IMG/VR virus record: IMGVR_UViG_3300006931_000029
Span: 62,001 to 126,000 of that record
Reading direction: 5' to 3' (one strand)
Length of the DNA stretch: 64,000 nt
The notes beneath the pieces were generated by a model. The model was given only the letters and a program-made list of their open reading frames with translations, had not been told where the DNA came from and made no database searches. Below, piece after piece: positions 124 to 61,010 of this stretch (positions within the stretch are counted from its first letter, which is position 1; every line of letters begins with the position of its first letter). The translations under genes were made by a program, and so were the position numbers.

Positions 124-209
124 TGGTGGCGAAAGAAGGGATCGAACCTCCGACCTGGTCGTCCATTTTTAAGGTGGCCGTCCATGCTCTACCGCTAAGC
201 TATTTCGCC
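124..209 (-). tRNA. atypical 86-nt tRNA with an anticodon stem extended by about 6 bp (apical loop CU-UAA-AA)
   Basis: Acceptor GGCGAAA/TTTCGCC-A-CCA, D arm GCTT-AGCGGTA-GAGC, T arm GGAGG-TTCGATC-CCTTC and a 4-nt variable region are normal. The anticodon arm is 29 nt rather than 17 nt. Confidence 0.75.
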
Positions 210-212
210 GAC

Positions 213-282
213 TTTCAAGAGAACACCGAGGAAACAGGAACAATCCAGATTACTACGGCCAAAACCTGGCGTTCTCTTGAAA
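213..282. repeat. perfect 12-bp inverted repeat closing a stem-loop that fills the spacer between two tRNA-like RNAs
   Basis: TTTCAAGAGAAC at 213-224 and GTTCTCTTGAAA at 271-282 enclose 46 nt. Confidence 0.65.
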
Positions 283-283
283 T

Positions 284-357
284 TGGAGCCGACCGGGGAT
301 TAAGAAACACCCCTCTTCCGTCCCATGGGACGGCGTGCGCGGTTACACTATGACGGC
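284..357 (-). tRNA. degenerate 74-nt tRNA-like RNA; CAT lies inside a self-complementary arm with no 7-nt loop
   Basis: Cloverleaf order and CCA end are kept: GCCGTCA/GGTCGGC (5 of 7 pairs), D stem GTGT/GCAC, anticodon arm CCGTCCCATGGGACGG (a perfect 16-nt palindrome), and T arm GGGG/CCCC with a non-canonical 11-nt loop. Confidence 0.55.
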
Positions 358-363
358 ATAAAG

Positions 364-469
364 TGGTGCCAAGGCCGACATCGCTGCCGGCGGCGAAACC
401 CTGCCCGCTGCATTAGTCGCGTCCGAAGACACGTCGAGAGCAGTGGCGTTTGATTCCACGGGGCTTGGC
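364..469 (-). ncRNA. 106-nt tRNA-like ncRNA with acceptor stem, ACCA end and four internal arms
   Basis: GCCAAG/CTTGGC-A-CCA closes the molecule. Arms: GTGG/CCAC; CGTGTC-TTCG-GACGCG (UUCG loop) inside TGC/GCA; GCGG/CCGC; CGGCA-GCGA-TGTCG (GNRA loop). There is no TTCG-type T loop at the canonical position. It lies 6 nt after the tmRNA 3' end. Confidence 0.6.
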
Positions 470-475
470 ATAAAT

Positions 476-830
476 TGGTGGAGATGGCGGGAGTTGAACC
501 CGCGTGCTAAAAGAGAACCGAATCTGAGTCTACGCGCGTGTCCTATTTTAATGTCCAGGCGGACCTATCTTTGGCTGAGTTTTTGAGTTCCGCCTCAGCC
601 GGCAGCGAAATCAGTAGCGTAGTTTTTACGCAGCACGATCTACCCCGCTCATCTTAATCGTGCCACGCGCAGCCTAATTAGGCCGCGAGACGGAGCTCGT
701 TGGAACGAGCGAACGCCTTGACAATGGTGTTGCCATTTGTGGTTTGCCAAGTCTTGTTATGGAGGTCGACCTAGCAGTCTCCAGCGCGCATCAGGTATCT
801 GTCTCCTAAAGTAGAATCCAGAACATCCCC
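476..830 (-). ncRNA. ssrA: tmRNA (355 nt); probable tag (A)GNTIVKAFARSNELRLAA encoded at 678..734
   Basis: 5' end GGGGATGTTCTGGATTC and 3' end CGCGGGTTCAACTCCCGCCATCTCCACCA give an acceptor stem with a G3-U70 pair. A pk1-like pairing GCTAGGTC/GACTTGGC is present, and the short ORF ends in LAA-stop. Confidence 0.95.
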
Positions 831-883: not shown

Positions 884-911
884 AGTTTACTGCTCAATGA
901 GTCAATGTAAA
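884..911 (-). promoter_or_regulatory. sigma70-like promoter for the ncRNA cluster
   Basis: Minus strand TTTACA-N16-TAAACT about 50 nt upstream of the tmRNA 5' end. Confidence 0.6.
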
Positions 912-927
912 CAAAAAAGATGCGTTC

Positions 928-1563
928 TCACGCATTTTGTTCAACTGGCCGAACGCCGTGAATTCCCTGCTTCAGGACATACCAGTAGAGTTTTCCTTCG
1001 AGTCGAATCTGGTTGGCGCGGCTCTTGTCGACGTAAATTTTGTCGCCGATCTTGATTTGGGCGAGCACCGGGTCTTCGCTCGATGGCAGAAGATTTCCGA
1101 TTTGCACGACCTCAAACTCTGGAGGTGGAATGGCCGAATCCGGCAGATAGAGACCGCCGATCATGTCGATCTTGATGTCACGAACGAGCACCCAGTCGCC
1201 GAGCACATGAAAATTTTCAAGCGTGATCTGCGGAGAATCCAGCTTCGCGAATGCGTCTCCTTGATGCATGATCATCACGGGCTGACGACGGTCACCTTCA
1301 CCGACAAAATGGGTCACGCCCATTTCGAACATCTTGTTGCATTGGTAGATGACGATGTCGCCGACCTTGACGGCAATTTCGACCGTGTCTCCGATGGACG
1401 CAACTCGGCCAAGCCGATGGACTTGGTTGGCATTGGAGGGCATCAGGATGATGCCAGTCGCTTCTTCCTGCACAGCGGTGAGAGCGACTCGGTGTTTGAC
1501 TGGACGCACGCAGCTTCTCAGGTCAATCTCTGCGGGTTTGAAAGGGACGACGTTGGAACTCAT
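928..1563 (-). CDS. groES: co-chaperonin with two tandem GroES/Cpn10 domains
   Basis: Two GroES-like repeats: RPVKHRVAL..TGIILMPSNA..GRVASIG..VKVGDIVIY and HVLGDWVLVR..IGGLYLPDSA..EVVQIG..IKIGDKIYV. Confidence 0.8.
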   Translation of the reverse strand: MSSNVVPFKPAEIDLRSCVRPVKHRVALTAVQEEATGIILMPSNANQVHRLGRVASIGDTVEIAVKVGDIVIYQCNKMFEMGVTHFVGEGDRRQPVMIMHQGDAFAKLDSPQITLENFHVLGDWVLVRDIKIDMIGGLYLPDSAIPPPEFEVVQIGNLLPSSEDPVLAQIKIGDKIYVDKSRANQIRLEGKLYWYVLKQGIHGVRPVEQNA

Positions 1564-54334: not shown

Positions 54335-56197
54335 TCACATCGGAATCACGGTCACCCTCATGTCCATCGATCCAGGAGTTAAATCGCCGGCAAGCCAATT
54401 CTGAAGGTTCACACCAACAGTTCCAGATGACACAACGTTTGCGGTCACGACGGCGCCAGTAGGCCAAGCGAAGCCGTCGATCCGGTTGACCATCGCTGCG
54501 TCGTTAATGTCTACACCGCCAAGCGGAACGTTCAGATCGGACGCCAGGCCGGAACCAACGGTTCCAAAATCGTGAGACACGGTTGCTGTGAGTAGCGAGA
54601 TTGAGCCTTGAAATCCTTGAGGACCTTGAAATCCCTGCGAACCTGTGCTTCCTTGAGCGCCGGTATCTCCTTGCGCTCCAGTGCCGCCGGCTGCACCTTG
54701 AAAACCTTGAAAGCCTTGTGTACCCGTTGAGCCTTGAAATCCCTGCGCGCCAGTATCTCCCTGCGCGCCCTGGAAACCTGCTCCTTGAAAACCTTGCGTT
54801 CCAGTCGTCCCTTGAAATCCTTGGCGGCCCTGAAAACCCTGAGCGCCCGTCACACCTTGCGATCCTTGCGCACCAGTAACGCCAGACGGCCCGGCAGGAA
54901 CGAAGTCAACGACGATGTCTTCAAGGTCGCCGAAAGTTCCTTCAGTCAAGAACGGAGACACCGTGAACTTCCTGTAGCCTGTTGCCGTCACGAACAGCGT
55001 GACGTTGAAAAATCCAAAGACGCTAGGATCAACTGGCGAGTAGAAGTGGAAAATACCCTTCAGAGTGCCTGATCCGACAGAGTTAATAGCACCAAGCCAT
55101 GCAGAGACGTCGACGTTGTTGTCGTTAGTCGTGCTGAAATACATTTCCGTCACGGAATCAGGATCGGCGTTGTTGAACGCAATCAAGCCGAGACCAGGGT
55201 CTTGGTCCACGGTGGACGTCGAAAAAGCGTACGGTTGGAAGTTTCCACCGAGATTGCCTTGCGGTCCTTGAAACCCTTGAGCGCCAAGTCCGCCTTGATT
55301 TCCAAGCGGGCCCGGAATTCCTTGTGGACCCGACGAACCCTGCGGACCGGCGATGACGCTGGGAGCGCCTTGCGGTCCTTGAAACCCTTGGAAACCCTGA
55401 AGTCCCTGGCTGCCGACGTTTCCTCTAGCTCCTTGAAACCCTTGCGTTCCCTCAGAGCCTTGAATGCCTTGATTTCCCTGTGATCCGCGCAAAAGAACTT
55501 GAGCCGACAGTTCGCTAGGAGTTTCCGTAGACGTCGTGTCTGCGCCTAGAGTTCCTTCAATGTTCTGCTGCGTAGCAACGTCCAACATTCCGATGATGTC
55601 TTGGCGGACCTGTGCAAGATTATCGACAGCGGCCTGCTGTTCAGCAGTCAAGACTTTCGCATTTTCGCCACCGAGACCAATCCCATTTCGATAATTCTCC
55701 TGTGTCCGTTGAATAACCGGTTGCGTGTACACGCCGACCTGATTCGTGGCGCCGCAAATTGCTCTGGCGCAGTTGACTGCTTGAATGCCAGGGCCAATTC
55801 TCTTTTCAAACTCCTTTGCCGCATCGCTGATCATGCCGTCAACTCGCGCCTGTAGTTGACCCAATTTTGCGAACGGATGCGTGTCGAGATTTCGCAGCAG
55901 CTTCAGGTAGGCTTCGTTTACGGCGTTCTGAAGATCGATCAACGCCTTGCCGTTGAACGGCGGCAAGAGTCCAGGACACAAAGCTTGAAGCTGATTGTAT
56001 TTGTCGATGTCAACCAGCACGATTGCGGTTAACTTAGACGGATCGACCAGAGGAATGTCTAGGCCTGCGTTGAAAAGCAAGTCGGCGACTCGACGCAGTG
56101 CTGCGAAGCGACCAATCAACTTGTTAAGCTGGTCAGTCGCGCCGACCGCGATCGCGTCCAGCATGGCGCAGAGTTCTTGTGGCGTGGACTGAGGCAT
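54335..56197 (-). CDS. collagen-like fibre protein (two Gly-X-Gln/Thr tracts)
   Basis: GXY runs at about 55244-55486 and 54604-54892. Start MPQST (56197) has TAATTAG 4 nt upstream. Confidence 0.8.
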   Translation of the reverse strand: MPQSTPQELCAMLDAIAVGATDQLNKLIGRFAALRRVADLLFNAGLDIPLVDPSKLTAIVLVDIDKYNQLQALCPGLLPPFNGKALIDLQNAVNEAYLKLLRNLDTHPFAKLGQLQARVDGMISDAAKEFEKRIGPGIQAVNCARAICGATNQVGVYTQPVIQRTQENYRNGIGLGGENAKVLTAEQQAAVDNLAQVRQDIIGMLDVATQQNIEGTLGADTTSTETPSELSAQVLLRGSQGNQGIQGSEGTQGFQGARGNVGSQGLQGFQGFQGPQGAPSVIAGPQGSSGPQGIPGPLGNQGGLGAQGFQGPQGNLGGNFQPYAFSTSTVDQDPGLGLIAFNNADPDSVTEMYFSTTNDNNVDVSAWLGAINSVGSGTLKGIFHFYSPVDPSVFGFFNVTLFVTATGYRKFTVSPFLTEGTFGDLEDIVVDFVPAGPSGVTGAQGSQGVTGAQGFQGRQGFQGTTGTQGFQGAGFQGAQGDTGAQGFQGSTGTQGFQGFQGAAGGTGAQGDTGAQGSTGSQGFQGPQGFQGSISLLTATVSHDFGTVGSGLASDLNVPLGGVDINDAAMVNRIDGFAWPTGAVVTANVVSSGTVGVNLQNWLAGDLTPGSMDMRVTVIPM

Positions 56198-56259
56198 TTT
56201 TCTAATTACAACGTTACTTAGGTCTAAGACCTCCACCCAAACCCATTCTTCAAAAGGTA

Positions 56260-56574
56260 ATGAATCACGTCACCAGAGACCAATTAGCAGACACCTTGGC
56301 CTCCAAGCAAGGGCTCACAACGATCGAAGCGCGCAAGACCGTCGACGTTTTTATCGAAGCGCTGGCCGAAGCGCTGGCCGGTGGAAAGGACGTTGAGCTA
56401 CGAGGACTTGGTTCCTTCACGGTGAAACGCACGCGCCCACGCCCTGGTCGCAATCCGATGAAGCCTGAACAGCAAGTCATCATACCTTCGAGACTCGTTG
56501 TCAAGTTCCGACCGGGCAAGATCATCAAAGGCGGTCTTACTAAGCTGAACGAGGCCGCCGCTCCTGTGACATAA
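56260..56574 (+). CDS. hup: HU/IHF histone-like DNA-binding protein
   Basis: VELRGLGSF..RPGRNP..IPSRLVVKFRPG motif. Confidence 0.92.
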   Translation: MNHVTRDQLADTLASKQGLTTIEARKTVDVFIEALAEALAGGKDVELRGLGSFTVKRTRPRPGRNPMKPEQQVIIPSRLVVKFRPGKIIKGGLTKLNEAAAPVT

Positions 56575-56602
56575 CTTCCTGTTTGGAAGTTCGGAATGGG
56601 GA

Positions 56603-57040
56603 GTGGACTTTTTCGTAATCATACCGGAGAAAAGGAATACCGGGTACTGTTGCGTCAAGTTCTGTCGTCACAAAACTCGAAAGAAGTATCACGACGGAAA
56701 CTTTTGCCGTCGCTGCCGAGATAGGCGATACGCGATCAAAAACCCAGTGTCCTACGCCTGGGACAAGTTGCGTTACAGCGCACGGCGCCGCAAGATTCCA
56801 TTTGAATTGACAATGGACCAGTTTCGTGTTTTCTGCATTGAAACAGGTTACATCGAGCAGAAGGGTAAGTCCAGCACATGTCTGACGATCGATCGAGTCG
56901 ACGCATCAAAAGGCTATGCCATCAGCAACATCCAGACGCTGACACAAACAGAAAATGGCCGCAAATCTTACGTCGACAGAAAGTTGGCCGAGTACAAGGC
57001 TCCTGAGATTGAACCGTACGACGAAGAGAATCCGTTTTAA
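56603..57040 (+). CDS. HNH-like endonuclease
   Basis: CRRC, RRRKIPFELT and TIDRVDASKGY..NIQ..EN motifs. Confidence 0.7.
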   Translation: MDFFVIIPEKRNTGYCCVKFCRHKTRKKYHDGNFCRRCRDRRYAIKNPVSYAWDKLRYSARRRKIPFELTMDQFRVFCIETGYIEQKGKSSTCLTIDRVDASKGYAISNIQTLTQTENGRKSYVDRKLAEYKAPEIEPYDEENPF

Positions 57041-59229
57041 GTGTCGGCTTGAGCCGTGAAGTCGGCTGTGAGGAAGTCGCAATCGTTCACCGCCCCGGCG
57101 AGCGACGTGGTTGGGTCGAAGTCGTCGATCCAGAATTCCTCGTGAAACACATAAATGCCGGCCGAGATCATCCACGGCTGGAACGTTTGCTTCGTTGGGA
57201 AAGAATCGGTCGGGTCGACTTGCCTAATTTCTCGATTGGCAATGTCATAGTAAATGCCGTTTGGCGTTAGGGCAGGTTGTCCAATGTCACCCGGGCGCCC
57301 AACTCGAAAAGCGTCTTTCAACCTGGATTCAACCACGAGAATGTAGTTCATCCACGACTCGGTAGATTCCTGTGTCCAAACAGTGGAGTTGGCGAATACC
57401 GGCTGAGTCTCTGCACTGAGCGTATACGCCCGACGGATCGACTCCAAAGCTTTCTGCATGTAGGTTCGCTTCCACAACCGATAGCCGGAAATCTGGGATG
57501 TCTCGCGTTGAGAACCGAATCGACGGATGTCGATCGTTCTCAGGTATAGGCCGCCGATGTTGACGTCATCCAGGAAGAGATTGACAGTCCCTGGATTCGC
57601 GTTGAAGAAGTCAAAGAAGAGCGTGTCAGGACGACCCGATTGACTGGAGAAGATTGCCGTAGACGCGACCGCTCCCATCGTGGCCGTCATTTTGCAACTG
57701 AGATTGCCTTCGCGAACGTTCACAAACTCAACCACGCCTACAGTCAACTTACCAGAGCCGCTATCGGTTCTTTCGATCGTGAATGAACCAACGTCGCCGT
57801 CAGCAGCCAAGACGTAGGAGTTCGAGTAGATGAACGTGCCAGCATCTTGACCATAAAGGATGAAGCCTTCGAAGAGAACCGTACCGTTCCAGATGACGCG
57901 TACTAGGAAATTGTCCGTGTCTGCCGAGTTATCAGCGAACCGGAACCGAACGGTGTAACGGCCTTCGATTAGTTTGATTTGCCAGTTGAGGAAACTCGGT
58001 CCGTTAAGCGTGGCGGTTTCAGAGCCGTCTGCTGGGATGCCATTGAGGTTCAAGCTACCGAATACTCGCGCAATGCGACTAGGTTCAAAATAGATCGCCA
58101 AACGATAGTGAGCAGTTGATGGGTCGGTAATTTGAGGAGTGAAAGAAACTCCAGAGCCAGGCGCGGGAAGATAAACTCCATCCGGCTGGTAGACTGCGCC
58201 AGATGCAAGGCTCACGTCTGCAACCGGATTCGGCTGGTAGTAAATGGGGACGGCGCGGTACGTGTTGATCTTCAGCCTATTCGACTTCTGCCGCCAAAAC
58301 TGGGCGTCTTCGTAGCTAGGACGAGCTCCTCGCACGGCGAGCGTGGTGGATGGATACGTCAACGCCAGCGACCCTCCGAATGGAGTTGAACCACTGCCAT
58401 CAAATGTTTCTCCGAACCATGTCACGGTCCGCAGGAACCGGTCGTAGACGATTCGATTACGATCAACCAAACCAGGTGAGGCGACAAACGTACGATAGCG
58501 TTCACCATCGTCTTTGAGGGTGTAAATCTCTGATTCGCGTGGGCCGTCGATGTCGGTCACTTGGACGTACAGTCGAGTTGCCCGGCTGTAGAGATCGTTG
58601 AGCTCGTACGCAACGTTGGCAATTGCCGTGGCAACCTTGTTATCGCGATCGGCGAGCAGTTGATCCGGTTCCTTGAACATCGGGACTGAAAGCGGAAGTG
58701 AACCGCTAACGGCCGAACGGCGCGTGCTTCCTTCTGCTAACGACCAAACGTCGGTTGGCGTGACGCCAGAAACGATCGATGCAATAGGCGAAACCTCGAA
58801 AACGCTGGCAACCTTAACGAGTGACTCGTACAGAAGCACGTCTCGAGCATAAAGCTGTCGGTCTGTAGTGATCGCTGCGATTGGGCGCGACGACGGTCTA
58901 ACGTGAGTCACAGCGCCTGGAAAAGCCGGCGTCGCCATGTCAGCCGTCGATGCTTGAAGATCGCCCGTTGGGACGCCCTGCACAGCTGGTCTCGTGGTGT
59001 CCAATCCGAAGACTTCAGCCGCTTCAACAGACACCTCAGAAAGCAACGCCATGAGTATGACGTCTCGGTAGGCAAGTTCGAAATCCCGCGCAGCGTATGC
59101 CGTGGCGTCGATCCCTACGTTTGCGTTGACAACGGTCAGTGCGCTACCTGGTACCCGAGATTGACCCCACGCCAGCGTGGTTGGAAGCGGGATGATTCGA
59201 ACAGACTGAAGAGGAGTCGCGAGGGCCAT
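57037..59229 (-). CDS. large structural protein with beta-sandwich segments
   Basis: 730 aa; GRYTVRFRFA..VRVIWNG is carbohydrate-binding-module-like; TACTTAA upstream. Confidence 0.5.
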   Translation of the reverse strand: MALATPLQSVRIIPLPTTLAWGQSRVPGSALTVVNANVGIDATAYAARDFELAYRDVILMALLSEVSVEAAEVFGLDTTRPAVQGVPTGDLQASTADMATPAFPGAVTHVRPSSRPIAAITTDRQLYARDVLLYESLVKVASVFEVSPIASIVSGVTPTDVWSLAEGSTRRSAVSGSLPLSVPMFKEPDQLLADRDNKVATAIANVAYELNDLYSRATRLYVQVTDIDGPRESEIYTLKDDGERYRTFVASPGLVDRNRIVYDRFLRTVTWFGETFDGSGSTPFGGSLALTYPSTTLAVRGARPSYEDAQFWRQKSNRLKINTYRAVPIYYQPNPVADVSLASGAVYQPDGVYLPAPGSGVSFTPQITDPSTAHYRLAIYFEPSRIARVFGSLNLNGIPADGSETATLNGPSFLNWQIKLIEGRYTVRFRFADNSADTDNFLVRVIWNGTVLFEGFILYGQDAGTFIYSNSYVLAADGDVGSFTIERTDSGSGKLTVGVVEFVNVREGNLSCKMTATMGAVASTAIFSSQSGRPDTLFFDFFNANPGTVNLFLDDVNIGGLYLRTIDIRRFGSQRETSQISGYRLWKRTYMQKALESIRRAYTLSAETQPVFANSTVWTQESTESWMNYILVVESRLKDAFRVGRPGDIGQPALTPNGIYYDIANREIRQVDPTDSFPTKQTFQPWMISAGIYVFHEEFWIDDFDPTTSLAGAVNDCDFLTADFTAQADT

Positions 59230-59277
59230 CGGTTTCGCTTAAGTATCCGTGTTGTTAGGACTGAAACATTCCATCCT

Positions 59278-59421
59278 ATGCTCGCATTCCTCGTAGGTCT
59301 CACCATCGGTGCCGTTGTCGGTGTAATCGCAACAATTCTCGTGTTCCGCAAGAACAAGGGAGTTCAGGCTCAGGCCGAATTGGCCGTTGATGCCGTCAAA
59401 CAGAAGATCGACAAGCACTAA
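59278..59421 (+). CDS. 47-aa single-pass membrane protein
   Basis: MLAFLVGLTIGAVVGVIATILVF followed by RKNK; this is the C-terminal part of track ORF 58903..59421. Confidence 0.6.
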   Translation: MLAFLVGLTIGAVVGVIATILVFRKNKGVQAQAELAVDAVKQKIDKH

Positions 59422-59771
59422 GTCTCGTCGTAGACGGGCATTCCGTTCGTCAGCCTCAGTTGGCGGTATTCCGAGCCAACATCGGCGGTCTGGTACTTCA
59501 CGGTCCAGTTGAAGCCGTTGTGGAAATCCGTCCGCCAAACGTCGCGCGCATCCTCAGGGTGGTGATGCCGAATGTGAAGACTTGGCTGCATGTGAAGCAA
59601 GTTGCCGTCGATCCGATATTCCCACGAGACGTTTGAAATCTTCGGCGTTCCGTTCTGGTGGACGTCAATGACACAAACACTCGGCTCTTTCCCTTCAGCC
59701 TTGTAGAGCAGATAGAGGCGTTGAGGAGTCGTCTGAGTCTGAAGAATGGCTGTGCCGACGACTTCGTCCAT
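59418..59771 (-). CDS. hypothetical protein
   Basis: 117 aa with TACGTAA 3 nt upstream. Confidence 0.55.
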   Translation of the reverse strand: MDEVVGTAILQTQTTPQRLYLLYKAEGKEPSVCVIDVHQNGTPKISNVSWEYRIDGNLLHMQPSLHIRHHHPEDARDVWRTDFHNGFNWTVKYQTADVGSEYRQLRLTNGMPVYDET

Positions 59772-59781
59772 GGTTTACGTA

Positions 59782-60228
59782 TCAGAGCTTCGTGACTCGG
59801 AAGTTTCCTGAAACGGAGACGCGCAACTGGGTTTCTTTCGTATTGTTCACTGCGAGAACCGCGTAGGTGTCAGGCGCTTCGAAGTCCCGCCAATAGTAAG
59901 GGTCCATTTGGTTGTAGGTCGGAACGTCACAAGGAACATAGACGAGAGGTTGTCCAGAGTGGAGGTTCAACTGTTCGAACTCCCCGGAGTAAAGACCGGC
60001 AAACGTGATCGCCATGTTCGTCGTCAACTTCTCGGCAACCTCGTTCTGAGTCACCACGTCGATGTAGTGGACGCTCAGCCACCGAAGACTCAACCGATAG
60101 TTCGGCGGAAGTTTCACTGAGCTGACCAGCACCGACGACATCGGATAAATGATTGACTGGGACATGCAAAACGGAATGTCCAGCCACCGACCGAGAGTGC
60201 CGGTTGGAATGTAAGTTGATGGAAGCAC
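59782..60228 (-). CDS. hypothetical beta-rich structural protein
   Basis: 148 aa with TATTTAA 4 nt upstream of GTG. Confidence 0.55.
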   Translation of the reverse strand: MLPSTYIPTGTLGRWLDIPFCMSQSIIYPMSSVLVSSVKLPPNYRLSLRWLSVHYIDVVTQNEVAEKLTTNMAITFAGLYSGEFEQLNLHSGQPLVYVPCDVPTYNQMDPYYWRDFEAPDTYAVLAVNNTKETQLRVSVSGNFRVTKL

Positions 60229-60255
60229 GGGCTTAAATAAGCCTAAATTTTATTG

Positions 60256-60283
60256 TTTACAAAATCCAGCAGAAGCGTATGGT
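60256..60283 (+). promoter_or_regulatory. sigma70-like promoter
   Basis: TTTACA-N16-TATGGT, 7 nt before ATG 60291; identical geometry to 47648. Confidence 0.65.
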
Positions 60284-60290
60284 GGTTGTC

Positions 60291-60689
60291 ATGGACGAGC
60301 GAGCGCTCACAAACAACCTACTGGGTCGTGGCCACTCCGACTCAACCCCAGTTGCCTTTAGACCCTGGGACACCCTTCACGCACGCGTCACTCAAGGAAT
60401 CGTGGCAGGTGCCGTCGGTGACCTATTGATTCTCAATGCAGTCAATGGCTTGACCGACCAACAAGCCGACATGTTTGCAGCCGCAGAGAAGCGCAGAGAA
60501 CTCGAGGAGTACGAAGAAGGTAAGCGAATCCTCGCCAGAAACCAAGAGCGAGCCCACGGCAAGTGGTTAGCCACCCAGAGGCAACTTAAAGCTCCGCCTC
60601 CATTGGAACGTCAACCTGGGGAAAGCGATGCCGTTTTCGCGCTGAAACAGCTAGCGCGTCACGAATTTCTAAGCAAGTTCAGTAGGTAA
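60291..60689 (+). CDS. hypothetical (probable early) protein
   Basis: The ATG at 60291 fits the promoter geometry. Confidence 0.55.
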   Translation: MDERALTNNLLGRGHSDSTPVAFRPWDTLHARVTQGIVAGAVGDLLILNAVNGLTDQQADMFAAAEKRRELEEYEEGKRILARNQERAHGKWLATQRQLKAPPPLERQPGESDAVFALKQLARHEFLSKFSR

Positions 60690-60692
60690 GAC

Positions 60693-61010
60693 GTGGACCC
60701 GAAAGACCTAGTCGAGCGCATGCTGGAGGACGATGACCGTGACCGGTACGATGACGAACCGAGAGACGGCTCTCTCGTCTATGCCACGATCTATCCAATC
60801 GGCGAAGAAGACGTTGACCTGGTGATTCGTTACCACGCGTCGAAAGCCCACCCTGACGATTCAGGCTACCGCCCAGGAGCTTACCACGTTGAAATCGAGG
60901 AGATTGTTCGAGACGACACAAAGGAAGACATCACGCGCAAGCTGACGCAGGATCAGTTCTACGAGCTGCAAGAAAAAGTCTCAGAACACTTCCACCACTA
61001 CGTCCGATGA
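60693..61010 (+). CDS. acidic hypothetical protein with LVERMLED leader
   Basis: 105 aa with TAGGTAA 3 nt upstream. Confidence 0.55.
   Translation: MDPKDLVERMLEDDDRDRYDDEPRDGSLVYATIYPIGEEDVDLVIRYHASKAHPDDSGYRPGAYHVEIEEIVRDDTKEDITRKLTQDQFYELQEKVSEHFHHYVR

What the first reader, a model, noticed from the sequence alone, without database searches (positions are those of the whole stretch)
364..469. 106-nt tRNA-like RNA with four internal arms, UUCG and GNRA loops
Seen: acceptor GCCAAG/CTTGGC-A-CCA (extendable to about 9 bp through a C-C mismatch), a D-like hairpin, a long UUCG-capped arm, a GCGG/CCGC arm and a GCGA-capped arm where the T arm should be. Two of the most stable tetraloop classes in one small RNA argue for a selected fold. 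I do not recognise it as any tRNA class, including tRNA-Sec. Inference: it may be a new ncRNA family.
Basis: partly seen in the sequence, partly recalled or inferred. Interest (0 to 1): 0.75.

Follow-up and report, generated by a model that had tools for sequence, protein, structure and literature searches.

The report
New tRNA-like RNA in jumbo phage
A 106-nucleotide RNA gene right after the tmRNA gene in a soil jumbo phage's tRNA cluster folds into a conserved Y shape with a tRNA-style acceptor stem and CCA end but no anticodon or T-loop; it looks like a real, undescribed small RNA, and its function is still unknown.

Summary
The feature is real and lies on the minus strand (window 469..364). 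It is the second gene of a tmRNA + ~37-tRNA operon in a complete 225-kb uncultured soil/rhizosphere jumbo phage. No Rfam family matches it even at permissive thresholds, and ARAGORN does not call it. Five further sequence variants were found in related phage contigs, always 5-7 nt after the tmRNA CCA.

- a 6-bp acceptor (GCCRAG/CUYGGC) with A-CCA;
- a 7-bp GNRA-capped hairpin stacked on the acceptor, giving a 13-bp tRNA-like minihelix;
- a long arm (8-bp P2, conserved internal loop, P3/P3b, and a terminal hairpin capped by UUCG, CUCG, GCAA or a longer loop).

This fold is the MFE in 5 of 6 members. The RNA has no anticodon loop, T-loop or D-loop. It is single-copy and confined to a narrow phage sub-clade. 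It is not related to T4 RNA C/D, YrlA Y RNA or tmRNA.

Expression could not be shown: metatranscriptome contigs cover only the adjacent tmRNA.

Most likely it is a tRNA-operon-processed, non-decoding mimic of the tRNA acceptor end. The actual function (decoy or adaptor) is inferred, not shown. It is a new ncRNA family of moderate interest.

The parts
364..469 (-). The whole 106-nt RNA gene (RNA position i = window 470 - i)
   Evidence: Covariance model R1 scores it 80.5 bits, E 1e-15, and finds it as the only copy in the 225-kb genome.
464..469 (-). Acceptor 5' strand GCCAAG (RNA 1-6)
   Evidence: Pairs with 368-373. Position 4 is A-U in the window and L015, and G-C in the other four members.
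368..373 (-). Acceptor 3' strand CUUGGC (RNA 97-102)
   Evidence: 100% of cells paired, with one compensatory position.
364..367 (-). Discriminator A plus genome-encoded CCA (RNA 103-106)
   Evidence: Invariant in all six members. Nearly every tRNA ARAGORN calls in the array likewise encodes its CCA, followed by a U-rich spacer.
452..459 (-). P2 5' strand (RNA 11-18), base of the long arm
   Evidence: 8 bp with 393-400. Compensatory change at 6 of 8 positions in the structural alignment and 4 double-sided pairs on the unfitted MAFFT alignment. Blocking P2 costs 0.5-6.8 kcal/mol.
393..400 (-). P2 3' strand (RNA 70-77)
440..451 (-). Conserved core, 5' side: internal loop MAAC, P3 5' strand and the invariant CUGC (RNA 19-30)
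   Evidence: CUGC and AAC are invariant columns. In P3, C-G changes to U-A in L012 and L077.
401..411 (-). Conserved core, 3' side: GCAG/GCUA, P3 3' strand G(R)GC and internal loop A(A)G (RNA 59-69)
418..433 (-). P4 terminal hairpin: 6 bp capped by UUCG (RNA 37-52)
   Evidence: Compensatory change at 5 of 6 positions. L015 differs from the window at only 3 nucleotides, and 2 of them convert C37-G52 to U-A. The cap varies: UUCG, CUCG, GCAA or a longer loop.
374..391 (-). P5: 7-bp hairpin with a GNRA loop (GCGA here), directly abutting the acceptor 3' strand (RNA 79-96)
   Evidence: Always 7 bp and always GNRA (GCGA, GUAA, GAAA). 100% of cells paired, with 3 compensatory positions.
470..475 (-). 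6-nt U-rich spacer (AUUUAU) between the tmRNA CCA and G1 of the RNA
   Evidence: The spacer is 5-7 nt in all six lineages.
476..830 (-). Phage tmRNA, the upstream neighbour and first gene of the RNA operon
   Evidence: Rfam 95 bits and ARAGORN. Assembled with 0 mismatches from metatranscriptomes, and the contig stops at the tmRNA 3' end.
884..911 (-). Promoter-like site TTTACA-16-TAAACT upstream of the tmRNA, preceded by a terminator-like hairpin at 920-935
   Evidence: These are consensus matches only. No such site lies between the tmRNA and the candidate.

Best explanation
This is a genuine, independently folding small RNA gene of a previously undescribed family. It is carried by a narrow clade of uncultured soil/rhizosphere jumbo myophages, as the second gene of their tmRNA-tRNA operon.

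Shown:
- It folds as a three-way junction. A 6-bp acceptor helix with an unpaired A-CCA 3' end abuts a 7-bp GNRA hairpin with no nucleotide between them. If the two stack coaxially, as is usual for abutting helices, they form a 13-bp helix resembling the acceptor/T-arm minihelix of tRNA.
- The third branch is a long arm: 8-bp P2, conserved internal loop, P3/P3b, and a stable terminal hairpin.
- It has no anticodon loop, no T-loop and no D-loop, so it cannot decode.

Inferred maturation:
- It is co-transcribed with the tmRNA.
- Its 5' end is cut by RNase P at G1. A minihelix with NCCA is a known minimal RNase P substrate. The cut would also leave the tmRNA with a 5-7-nt trailer to be trimmed.
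- Its 3' end is trimmed back to the encoded CCA, as for the neighbouring tRNAs.
- The invariant helix lengths (P5 7 bp, P2 8 bp) and the invariant GNRA loop class suggest that the P5 loop docks on the conserved internal loop/P3 of the long arm.

Inferred function, with low confidence in the specific role: a stable, non-decoding mimic of the tRNA acceptor end. It would occupy or titrate a factor that reads acceptor-CCA ends, for example a host tRNA-end-targeting defence enzyme or part of the aminoacylation/CCA machinery, rather than take part in translation.
For: - Context: it lies in a minus-strand array of a tmRNA plus 36 ARAGORN-called tRNAs (more by Rfam) in a complete 224,954-bp virus record. 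It follows the array's layout of encoded CCA, short U-rich spacer, next RNA. There is a promoter-like site only upstream of the tmRNA.
- No known family.
- Homologs: six distinct sequences, all 5-7 nt after a tmRNA.
- Covariation: compensatory changes in every helix. On the unfitted alignment 87% of cells pair, against 79% in shuffles and 28-46% with slid partners, and 11 pairs show double-sided change (0 of 500 shuffles reach this).
- Near-identical L015 differs at 3 positions, and 2 of them form a compensatory pair.
- Thermodynamics: the Y fold is the MFE in 5 of 6 members and within 0.4 kcal/mol in the sixth.
- Sequence diverges as fast as or faster than its neighbours (64% identity against 87% for the tmRNA, window vs L010) while the helices persist.
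- A metatranscriptome contig of the tmRNA ends at the mature tmRNA 3' end and does not run into the candidate, consistent with cleavage between them.
Against: - No RNA-seq contig covers the element itself, so stable accumulation and the exact ends are unproven.
- Only six variants from about four lineages are known, so the covariation statistics rest on few independent events.
- A rival central fold (a D-like hairpin plus a CUGCU/AGYAG helix) also pairs well, at 94% of cells. An alternative or switching conformation cannot be excluded.
- The element is absent from the next-closest relative, which does have a tmRNA (L363), so it is dispensable for the phage type.
- Nothing here identifies a binding partner. 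The phage encodes no SmpB, CCA-adding enzyme or RtcB.
Confidence: 0.6

Rival explanations
1. It is a cis-acting processing module rather than a trans-acting RNA. It would be a minimal RNase P substrate placed after the tmRNA so that cleavage at its 5' end releases the tmRNA 3' end and punctuates the operon. The excised piece would have no further role.
For: - Strict 5-7-nt adjacency to the tmRNA CCA in all six lineages, while the sequence further downstream has indels.
- The tmRNA contig stops exactly at the junction.
- The acceptor plus 7-bp hairpin plus ACCA is what a minimal RNase P substrate needs (established knowledge).
Against: - Any ordinary tRNA would do this job.
- It does not explain the conserved, covarying long arm with invariant loop nucleotides, or the fixed helix lengths.
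- In L363 the tmRNA is followed directly by an ORF without such an element.
Confidence: 0.17
2. It is a decaying tRNA pseudogene (for example a former class II tRNA-Leu-like gene with a GCC... acceptor and A73) with no function.
For: - The array contains other aberrant tRNA-shaped sequences. One is the 74-nt element at window 284-357, which is present in only two lineages.
- The acceptor GCC.../A73 resembles several of the phage's tRNA-Leu genes.
Against: - Compensatory substitutions in all helices, invariant helix lengths and an invariant GNRA loop class across lineages whose flanking protein is only 65-90% identical.
- No tRNA-model signal at all.
Confidence: 0.06
3. It is a Y-RNA-like partner of the phage's Ro60 (TROVE) protein, which is encoded at the far end of the same array.
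For: - The phage encodes a TROVE+VWA protein just downstream of the array.
- Bacterial and phage Y RNAs mimic tRNA, and M. smegmatis YrlA is cut by RNase P and gains CCA (PMC4201824).
Against: - The Ro60-binding motif GNCGAAN0-1G is absent from all six members.
- It has no T or D arm.
- It lies ~8 kb from the TROVE gene, whereas Y RNAs are normally adjacent to it.
- Its free ends are at the acceptor, not at a Ro-binding stem.
- No Rfam family of any kind, Y RNA included, reaches E<=10 on the element alone.
Confidence: 0.08
4. It is a miniature derivative of the tmRNA tRNA-like domain (acceptor, P2 stalk, 3' hairpin) that works with SmpB or the tmRNA in ribosome rescue.
For: - Same topology as a tmRNA TLD, and immediate adjacency to the tmRNA.
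- The 5' joint region loosely resembles the cuGGaUUCGAC motif.
Against: - Similarity to each phage's own tmRNA is not significant (shuffle p 0.1-0.95).
- No G3:U70 pair, no T-loop and no tmRNA-model hit.
- Absent beside the tmRNA of L363 and beside 95 other viral tmRNA 3' ends.
Confidence: 0.04
5. It is an unusual decoding tRNA (tRNA-Sec, a suppressor, or an intron-containing tRNA).
For: - A 13-bp acceptor-plus-hairpin stack equals the 13-bp acceptor/T domain of tRNA-Sec.
- It sits in a tRNA array.
Against: - There is no 7-nt anticodon loop anywhere. The terminal loops are tetraloops of variable sequence.
- No T-loop.
- The tRNA and tRNA-Sec models and ARAGORN (with and without introns) all fail to find it.
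Confidence: 0.02

Closest known systems
Phage T4 RNA C and RNA D (species 1 and 2 stable RNAs in the T4 tRNA gene cluster)
   Same: These are small stable non-tRNA RNAs encoded within a phage tRNA gene cluster on the same strand as the tRNAs. Their function is still unknown (PMC9697503; T4 annotation).
   Different: No homology: model R1 gives at most 9.8 bits on the T4 cluster. T4 RNA C carries a genuine T arm (GGGUUCGAAUCCC) and is 139 nt long. The candidate has a GNRA hairpin instead and an encoded ACCA.
tmRNA tRNA-like domain (RF00023)
   Same: Three-way topology of acceptor, long P2 stalk and 3' hairpin, with discriminator A and CCA. The two are physical neighbours in one operon.
   Different: No G3:U70, T-loop, coding region or pseudoknots. 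Sequence similarity is not significant. There is no model hit.
YrlA-type bacterial/phage Y RNAs
   Same: They are tRNA-mimicking ncRNAs found in genomes that encode Ro60. Some are RNase P substrates and carry CCA (PMC4201824).
   Different: YrlA has true D and T arms and a Ro60-binding stem bearing GNCGAAN0-1G, and it lies next to rsr. The candidate has none of these features.
tRNA acceptor/T-arm minihelices (classical minimal substrates of RNase P, the CCA-adding enzyme and some aminoacyl-tRNA synthetases)
   Same: A 13-bp continuous helix ending in a single-stranded NCCA. This comparison rests on established knowledge and was not tested here.
   Different: The candidate is a natural gene with an additional conserved long arm. 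Its hairpin loop is GNRA rather than a T-loop.

Membership tests
tRNA (RF00005) | Cloverleaf with D arm, anticodon arm with a 7-nt loop, and T arm with a T-loop, as detected by the tRNA covariance model or ARAGORN | tested here: not met
   No tRNA hit at gathering or at E<=10. ARAGORN finds nothing with or without introns. The terminal loops are tetraloops.
tRNA (RF00005) | Acceptor helix formed by the 5' and 3' ends, followed by a discriminator base and CCA | tested here: met
   A 6-bp helix plus A-CCA, invariant or covarying in six members.
tRNA-Sec (RF01852) | UCA anticodon loop, long variable arm, 13-bp acceptor/T domain with a T-loop | tested here: not met
   No model hit, no anticodon loop and no T-loop. 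Only the 13-bp stack length coincides.
tmRNA (RF00023 and permuted forms) | TLD with G3:U70 and a T-loop, plus a tag reading frame and pseudoknots | tested here: not met
   Position 3 is C-G. There is no T-loop, no ORF and no model hit. Similarity to the phages' own tmRNAs is not significant.
YrlA / bacterial Y RNA | Ro60-binding 5'-strand motif GNCGAAN0-1G in a stem formed by the RNA ends | tested here: not met
   The regular expression finds no match in any of the six members. The motif definition is from PMC4201824.
YrlA / bacterial Y RNA | tRNA-like D and T arms, with the gene adjacent to rsr (Ro60) | tested here: not met
   No T or D arm. The TROVE gene is ~8 kb away at the other end of the array.
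YrlA / bacterial Y RNA | Physical binding to Ro60 | not testable with these tools
   Needs co-immunoprecipitation or a gel-shift assay.
T4 RNA C/D | Sequence and structure homology to T4 rnaC or rnaD | tested here: not met
   Model R1 with filters off gives at most 9.8 bits, E 0.46, on the T4 tRNA cluster, and none of the hits lies on rnaC or rnaD. The folds differ.
RNase P substrate class (works-like test, not a family) | Cleavage at G1 by bacterial RNase P | not testable with these tools
   Inferred only from the minihelix+NCCA anatomy, the array layout and the tmRNA contig ending at the junction.

The most novel reading that the evidence does not exclude
The RNA is a dedicated phage counter-defence or translation-control molecule. 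It would be a CCA-ended, possibly aminoacylatable minihelix whose elbow is replaced by a GNRA-receptor clamp. It would act as a decoy for host enzymes that attack or modify tRNA 3' ends, or as a cofactor of the adjacent phage tmRNA. That would make it a new functional class of tRNA mimic.
Probability: 0.15. Interest if true: 0.8.

Novelty: new variant of a known kind. Interest (0 to 1): 0.55.

Why it matters
Phage tRNA arrays are increasingly seen as tools for countering host tRNA-targeting defences. Non-tRNA RNAs inside such arrays, such as T4 RNA C and D, have stayed unexplained for decades. This element is a cleanly defined case supported by covariation. It keeps only the acceptor/CCA end of a tRNA and replaces the rest with a different, conserved architecture. 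That isolates the acceptor end as the likely functional surface and gives a small, testable object for RNase P cleavage, aminoacylation, probing and pull-down experiments. Its array also holds a mini RNase P-like RNA, a Ro60 gene and module-bearing tRNAs, so this phage clade is a rich source of unusual RNA biology.

Tried and rejected
1. Known families: Rfam at gathering, at E<=10 on 1 kb, and at E<=10 on the element alone found nothing.
2. Exact-word search of IMG/VR and blastn against GenBank phages matched only generic tmRNA and tRNA ends.
3. The pattern scan 'tmRNA end + acceptor strands' gave 6 viral hits and more than 120 each in the metagenome and genome collections. Nearly all are chance matches in GC-rich coding DNA, and only the six family variants are real. 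My prior estimate of chance hits was too low.
4. Paralogs: none in the whole genome, the related arrays, a 635-kb megaphage with the closest Ro60, or 95 viral contigs sharing the tmRNA 3' end.
5. I kept this only as a possible alternative conformer.
6. The tmRNA-derived hypothesis: similarity is not significant.
7. Y RNA: the motif is absent.
8. T4 RNA C/D: unrelated.
9. RNAduplex of the candidate against the tmRNA gave meaningless full-length hybrids and was discarded.
10. Expression: four metatranscriptomes hold the tmRNA but give no contig for the candidate or the tRNAs. This is inconclusive, because ~100-nt RNAs are usually lost from such libraries and contigs show presence, not absence.
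11. More distant relatives (66% identity or less in the 345-aa neighbour) have no RNA array at this site.

Full report
**Where and what.** The window is bases 62,001-126,000 of a complete 224,954-bp IMG/VR virus record with direct terminal repeats. It encodes a tail sheath, baseplate proteins and a T4-type baseplate protein. Its sheath is only ~22% identical to those of T4-like phages, so it has no close cultured relative.

The finding lies on the minus strand (window 469 down to 364). It sits 6 nt downstream of a tmRNA (830..476; Rfam 95 bits; ARAGORN tag GNTIVKAFARSNELRLAA). It is at the upstream end of an ~8.5-kb minus-strand array. ARAGORN tRNAs there and the Rfam tRNA model matches a few more. 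Nearly every ARAGORN-called tRNA in the array encodes its own CCA, followed by a short U-rich spacer and then the next RNA, and the candidate follows this layout exactly.

A terminator-like hairpin and a promoter-like site (TTTACA-16-TAAACT) lie upstream of the tmRNA, and none lies between the tmRNA and the candidate. The candidate is therefore most likely the second gene of a polycistronic RNA operon. This rests on consensus matches only.

**Is it a known RNA?** No.
- Rfam finds nothing over 364-469 at gathering thresholds, at E<=10 on the first kilobase, or at E<=10 on the element alone.
- ARAGORN finds nothing with or without intron search.
- The MFE is -47 kcal/mol, z = -2.5 against dinucleotide shuffles.

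**Homologs.** Exact-word and blastn searches found no copies. Relatives were reached through the 211-aa Cpn10-like protein encoded just upstream of the tmRNA. It has five clusters at 59-98% identity, one on a 229-kb contig, and their contigs were fetched. All syntenic contigs that extend far enough carry an ortholog 5-7 nt after the tmRNA CCA.

A pattern scan anchored on the tmRNA end and the acceptor strands added one more variant, L077. It otherwise returned chance matches in GC-rich coding DNA, and the same was true for bacterial genomes.

The family currently has six distinct sequences of 102-116 nt:
- the window sequence, also found in an independent metagenome contig (L029);
- L015 (= L016, L052);
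- L010;
- L011;
- L012 (= L013, L133);
- L077.

**Structure.** Five of the six sequences fold independently into the same Y shape, with these elements:
- a 6-bp acceptor (GCCRAG/CUYGGC) plus ACCA;
- a 2-4-nt joiner;
- an 8-bp P2;
- an internal loop (MAAC opposite A(A)G(Y));
- a 3-5-bp P3;
- a 2-4-bp P3b built on the invariant CUGC;
- a terminal hairpin P4;
- a 1-3-nt joiner;
- a 7-bp GNRA hairpin P5 that directly abuts the acceptor 3' strand.

In a hand-curated structural alignment, compensatory (double-sided) changes occur in the acceptor (1 position), P2 (6 of 8), P3 (2), P4 (5 of 6) and P5 (3 of 7). L015 differs from the window at only three nucleotides, and two of them convert C37-G52 to U-A in P4.

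On the plain MAFFT alignment, which is not fitted to any structure, the same fold gives:
- 87% of cells paired, against 79% in shuffles and 28-46% with slid partners;
- 11 pairs with double-sided change and a covariation score of 0.33, with 0 of 500 shuffles reaching either value.

The Y fold is the MFE in 5 of 6 members and lies within 0.4 kcal/mol of it in L011. Blocking P2 costs 0.5-6.8 kcal/mol.

**Rival folds.** RNAalifold proposes a different centre: a D-like hairpin, a CUGCU/AGYAG helix and a small hairpin. I therefore prefer the Y fold, and I cannot exclude an alternative conformer.

**What is conserved.**
- The helix lengths are fixed: acceptor 6 bp, P2 8 bp, P5 7 bp.
- The GNRA class of the P5 loop is fixed (GCGA, GUAA, GAAA).
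- ACCA, CUGC and the loop nucleotides around P3 are invariant.
- The P4 cap is interchangeable: UUCG, CUCG, GCAA or a 9-nt loop.
- Overall sequence identity drops as fast as or faster than in the neighbours. Between the window and L010 it is 64%, against 87% for the tmRNA and 81% for the Cpn10-like gene. This is the pattern of constraint on structure.

My inference, which I did not test, is that the P5 GNRA loop reaches the conserved internal loop/P3 of the long arm lying alongside it. That would explain the fixed 7-bp and 8-bp lengths.

**What it is not.**
- It has no 7-nt anticodon-type loop, T-loop or D-loop, so it is not a decoding tRNA or tRNA-Sec.
- It lacks G3:U70. Its similarity to the phages' own tmRNAs is not significant.
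- The phage does encode a TROVE/Ro60+VWA protein at the far end of the array. But the Y-RNA hallmark motif GNCGAAN0-1G (PMC4201824) is absent from all six members, and the gene is ~8 kb away.
- T4 RNA C and D, the classical unexplained stable RNAs of a phage tRNA cluster (PMC9697503), are unrelated. The covariance model gives no meaningful score on the T4 cluster, and RNA C has a true T arm.

**Distribution.**
- The RNA is single-copy in the 225-kb genome.
- It has no paralogs in the related arrays.
- It is absent from a 635-kb megaphage carrying the closest Ro60.
- It is absent from 95 viral contigs sharing the tmRNA 3' end. That result (0 hits in 811 kb) also serves as a specificity control for the model.
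- The 345-aa neighbour protein has a large family. In a 70% relative the tmRNA is present but is followed directly by an ORF, with no candidate. In relatives at 66% identity or below, there is no RNA array at this site.

The element is thus confined to a narrow sub-clade and is not an obligatory tmRNA appendage.

**Expression.** Public runs from rhizosphere and soil hold the locus. In four RNA libraries the tmRNA is assembled with zero mismatches. One contig spans 478-822, stopping at the mature tmRNA 3' end without running into the candidate. No contig covers the candidate or the nearby tRNA. Because ~100-nt RNAs are normally lost from such libraries, this says nothing against expression. The sharp contig end is weak support for cleavage at the junction.

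The phage encodes no SmpB, CCA-adding enzyme or RtcB, and has only a sub-threshold, stop-containing RnpA-like fragment. Maturation must therefore rely on host proteins.

**Interpretation.** The anatomy and the evolutionary constraint are shown. The following are inferred:
- co-transcription with the tmRNA;
- RNase P cleavage at G1;
- trimming to the encoded CCA;
- a compact fold clamped by the GNRA loop;
- a role as a non-decoding mimic of the tRNA acceptor end that engages some acceptor/CCA-reading factor.

I put about 0.8 on 'real, selected, independently folding RNA of a new family', 0.6 on the whole maturation-and-mimic package, and no more than 0.2-0.3 on any specific function. The main rival is a purely cis-acting processing module for the tmRNA and the operon.

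**Novelty and score.** This is a new RNA family. As a kind it belongs with the tRNA-like RNAs of phage tRNA clusters, but it has a distinct architecture: acceptor end only, with the elbow replaced by a GNRA hairpin and a long arm. Interest is moderate (0.55). The structure is well supported and unusual, but the family is small, its function is unknown and its expression is unproven.

Noticed in passing
outside the window: genome 56,335-56,548 (-) = L004:6335-6548; also L011:13997-14234: A 214-238-nt RNA inside the tRNA array matches the bacterial RNase P class A model end to end but far below gathering (46.9 and 43.3 bits, E 5e-12 and 2e-10). It occurs in two phages of the clade. It may be a miniaturised phage-encoded RNase P RNA, and the genome has no convincing RnpA protein.
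   Followed up: partly
window 127-209 (-): An odd tRNA: Rfam tRNA scores it 48 bits, and ARAGORN misses it without intron mode. It has ~12 extra nucleotides in the anticodon arm, drawable by hand as an extended stem with a loop CCUUAAAAA. It is conserved in L010, L011 and L015. With intron mode ARAGORN calls it tRNA-Phe(aaa).
   Followed up: partly
window 284-357 (-): A 74-nt tRNA-shaped, CCA-ended sequence directly downstream of the candidate. Its 'anticodon arm' ends in a 4-nt loop and its T stem closes an 11-nt loop. It is present only in the window phage and L010, and is deleted in L015, L011 and L012. It is probably a decaying or second non-decoding tRNA-like gene.
   Followed up: partly
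window 210-283 (-): A very stable long hairpin (stem UUCAAGAGAAC.../...GUUCUCUUGAA; MFE -27 kcal/mol, z = -4.6) precedes the odd tRNA. The inverted repeat is conserved in L015, L010 and L011, while the interior varies.
   Followed up: partly
window 476-830 (-): The phage-encoded tmRNA (tag GNTIVKAFARSNELRLAA) is recovered with 0 mismatches from three rhizosphere/soil metatranscriptomes. It is present in RNA libraries, although DNA carry-over cannot be excluded. The phage has no SmpB gene.
   Followed up: yes
outside the window: genome 59,711-61,315 (-): A recurring ~60-nt module (GACUUUUCUC, a GNRA hairpin, GCAGUGA, a covarying stem, GGUUACUUC) is inserted in anticodon loops of otherwise normal tRNAs and in tRNA-like RNAs, and also stands alone. 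It has no Rfam match. It could be a small intron, a ribozyme or a protein-binding module.
   Followed up: no
outside the window: genome ~55,180-61,000 (-), gaps of the array: Several further CCA-ended tRNA-like RNAs that ARAGORN does not call. Some have an unusual T-loop, GGGUGCAA(G/C)UCCC. Two are ~95-nt paralogs ending GCGCAGUGCGAACCUGC...CCUCCGCCA.
   Followed up: no
outside the window: L004:2566-4128 (-) = genome 52,566-54,128: A TROVE (Ro60) + VWA protein is encoded immediately downstream of the tRNA array, with a weak tRNA-model hit (35 bits) just upstream of it that may be the real Y-RNA candidate. The arrangement is conserved in L010 and L011.
   Followed up: partly
outside the window: genome 132,581-132,656 (+): A tRNA with anticodon CUA (amber-suppressor type; ARAGORN labels it Pyl), which raises the question of TAG recoding in part of the genome.
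   Followed up: no
window 928-1563 (-): A double-length (211-aa) Cpn10/GroES-like protein with the Cpn10 domain in its C-terminal half. It is conserved next to a phage-specific 345-aa protein across a large clade of jumbo phages.
   Followed up: partly
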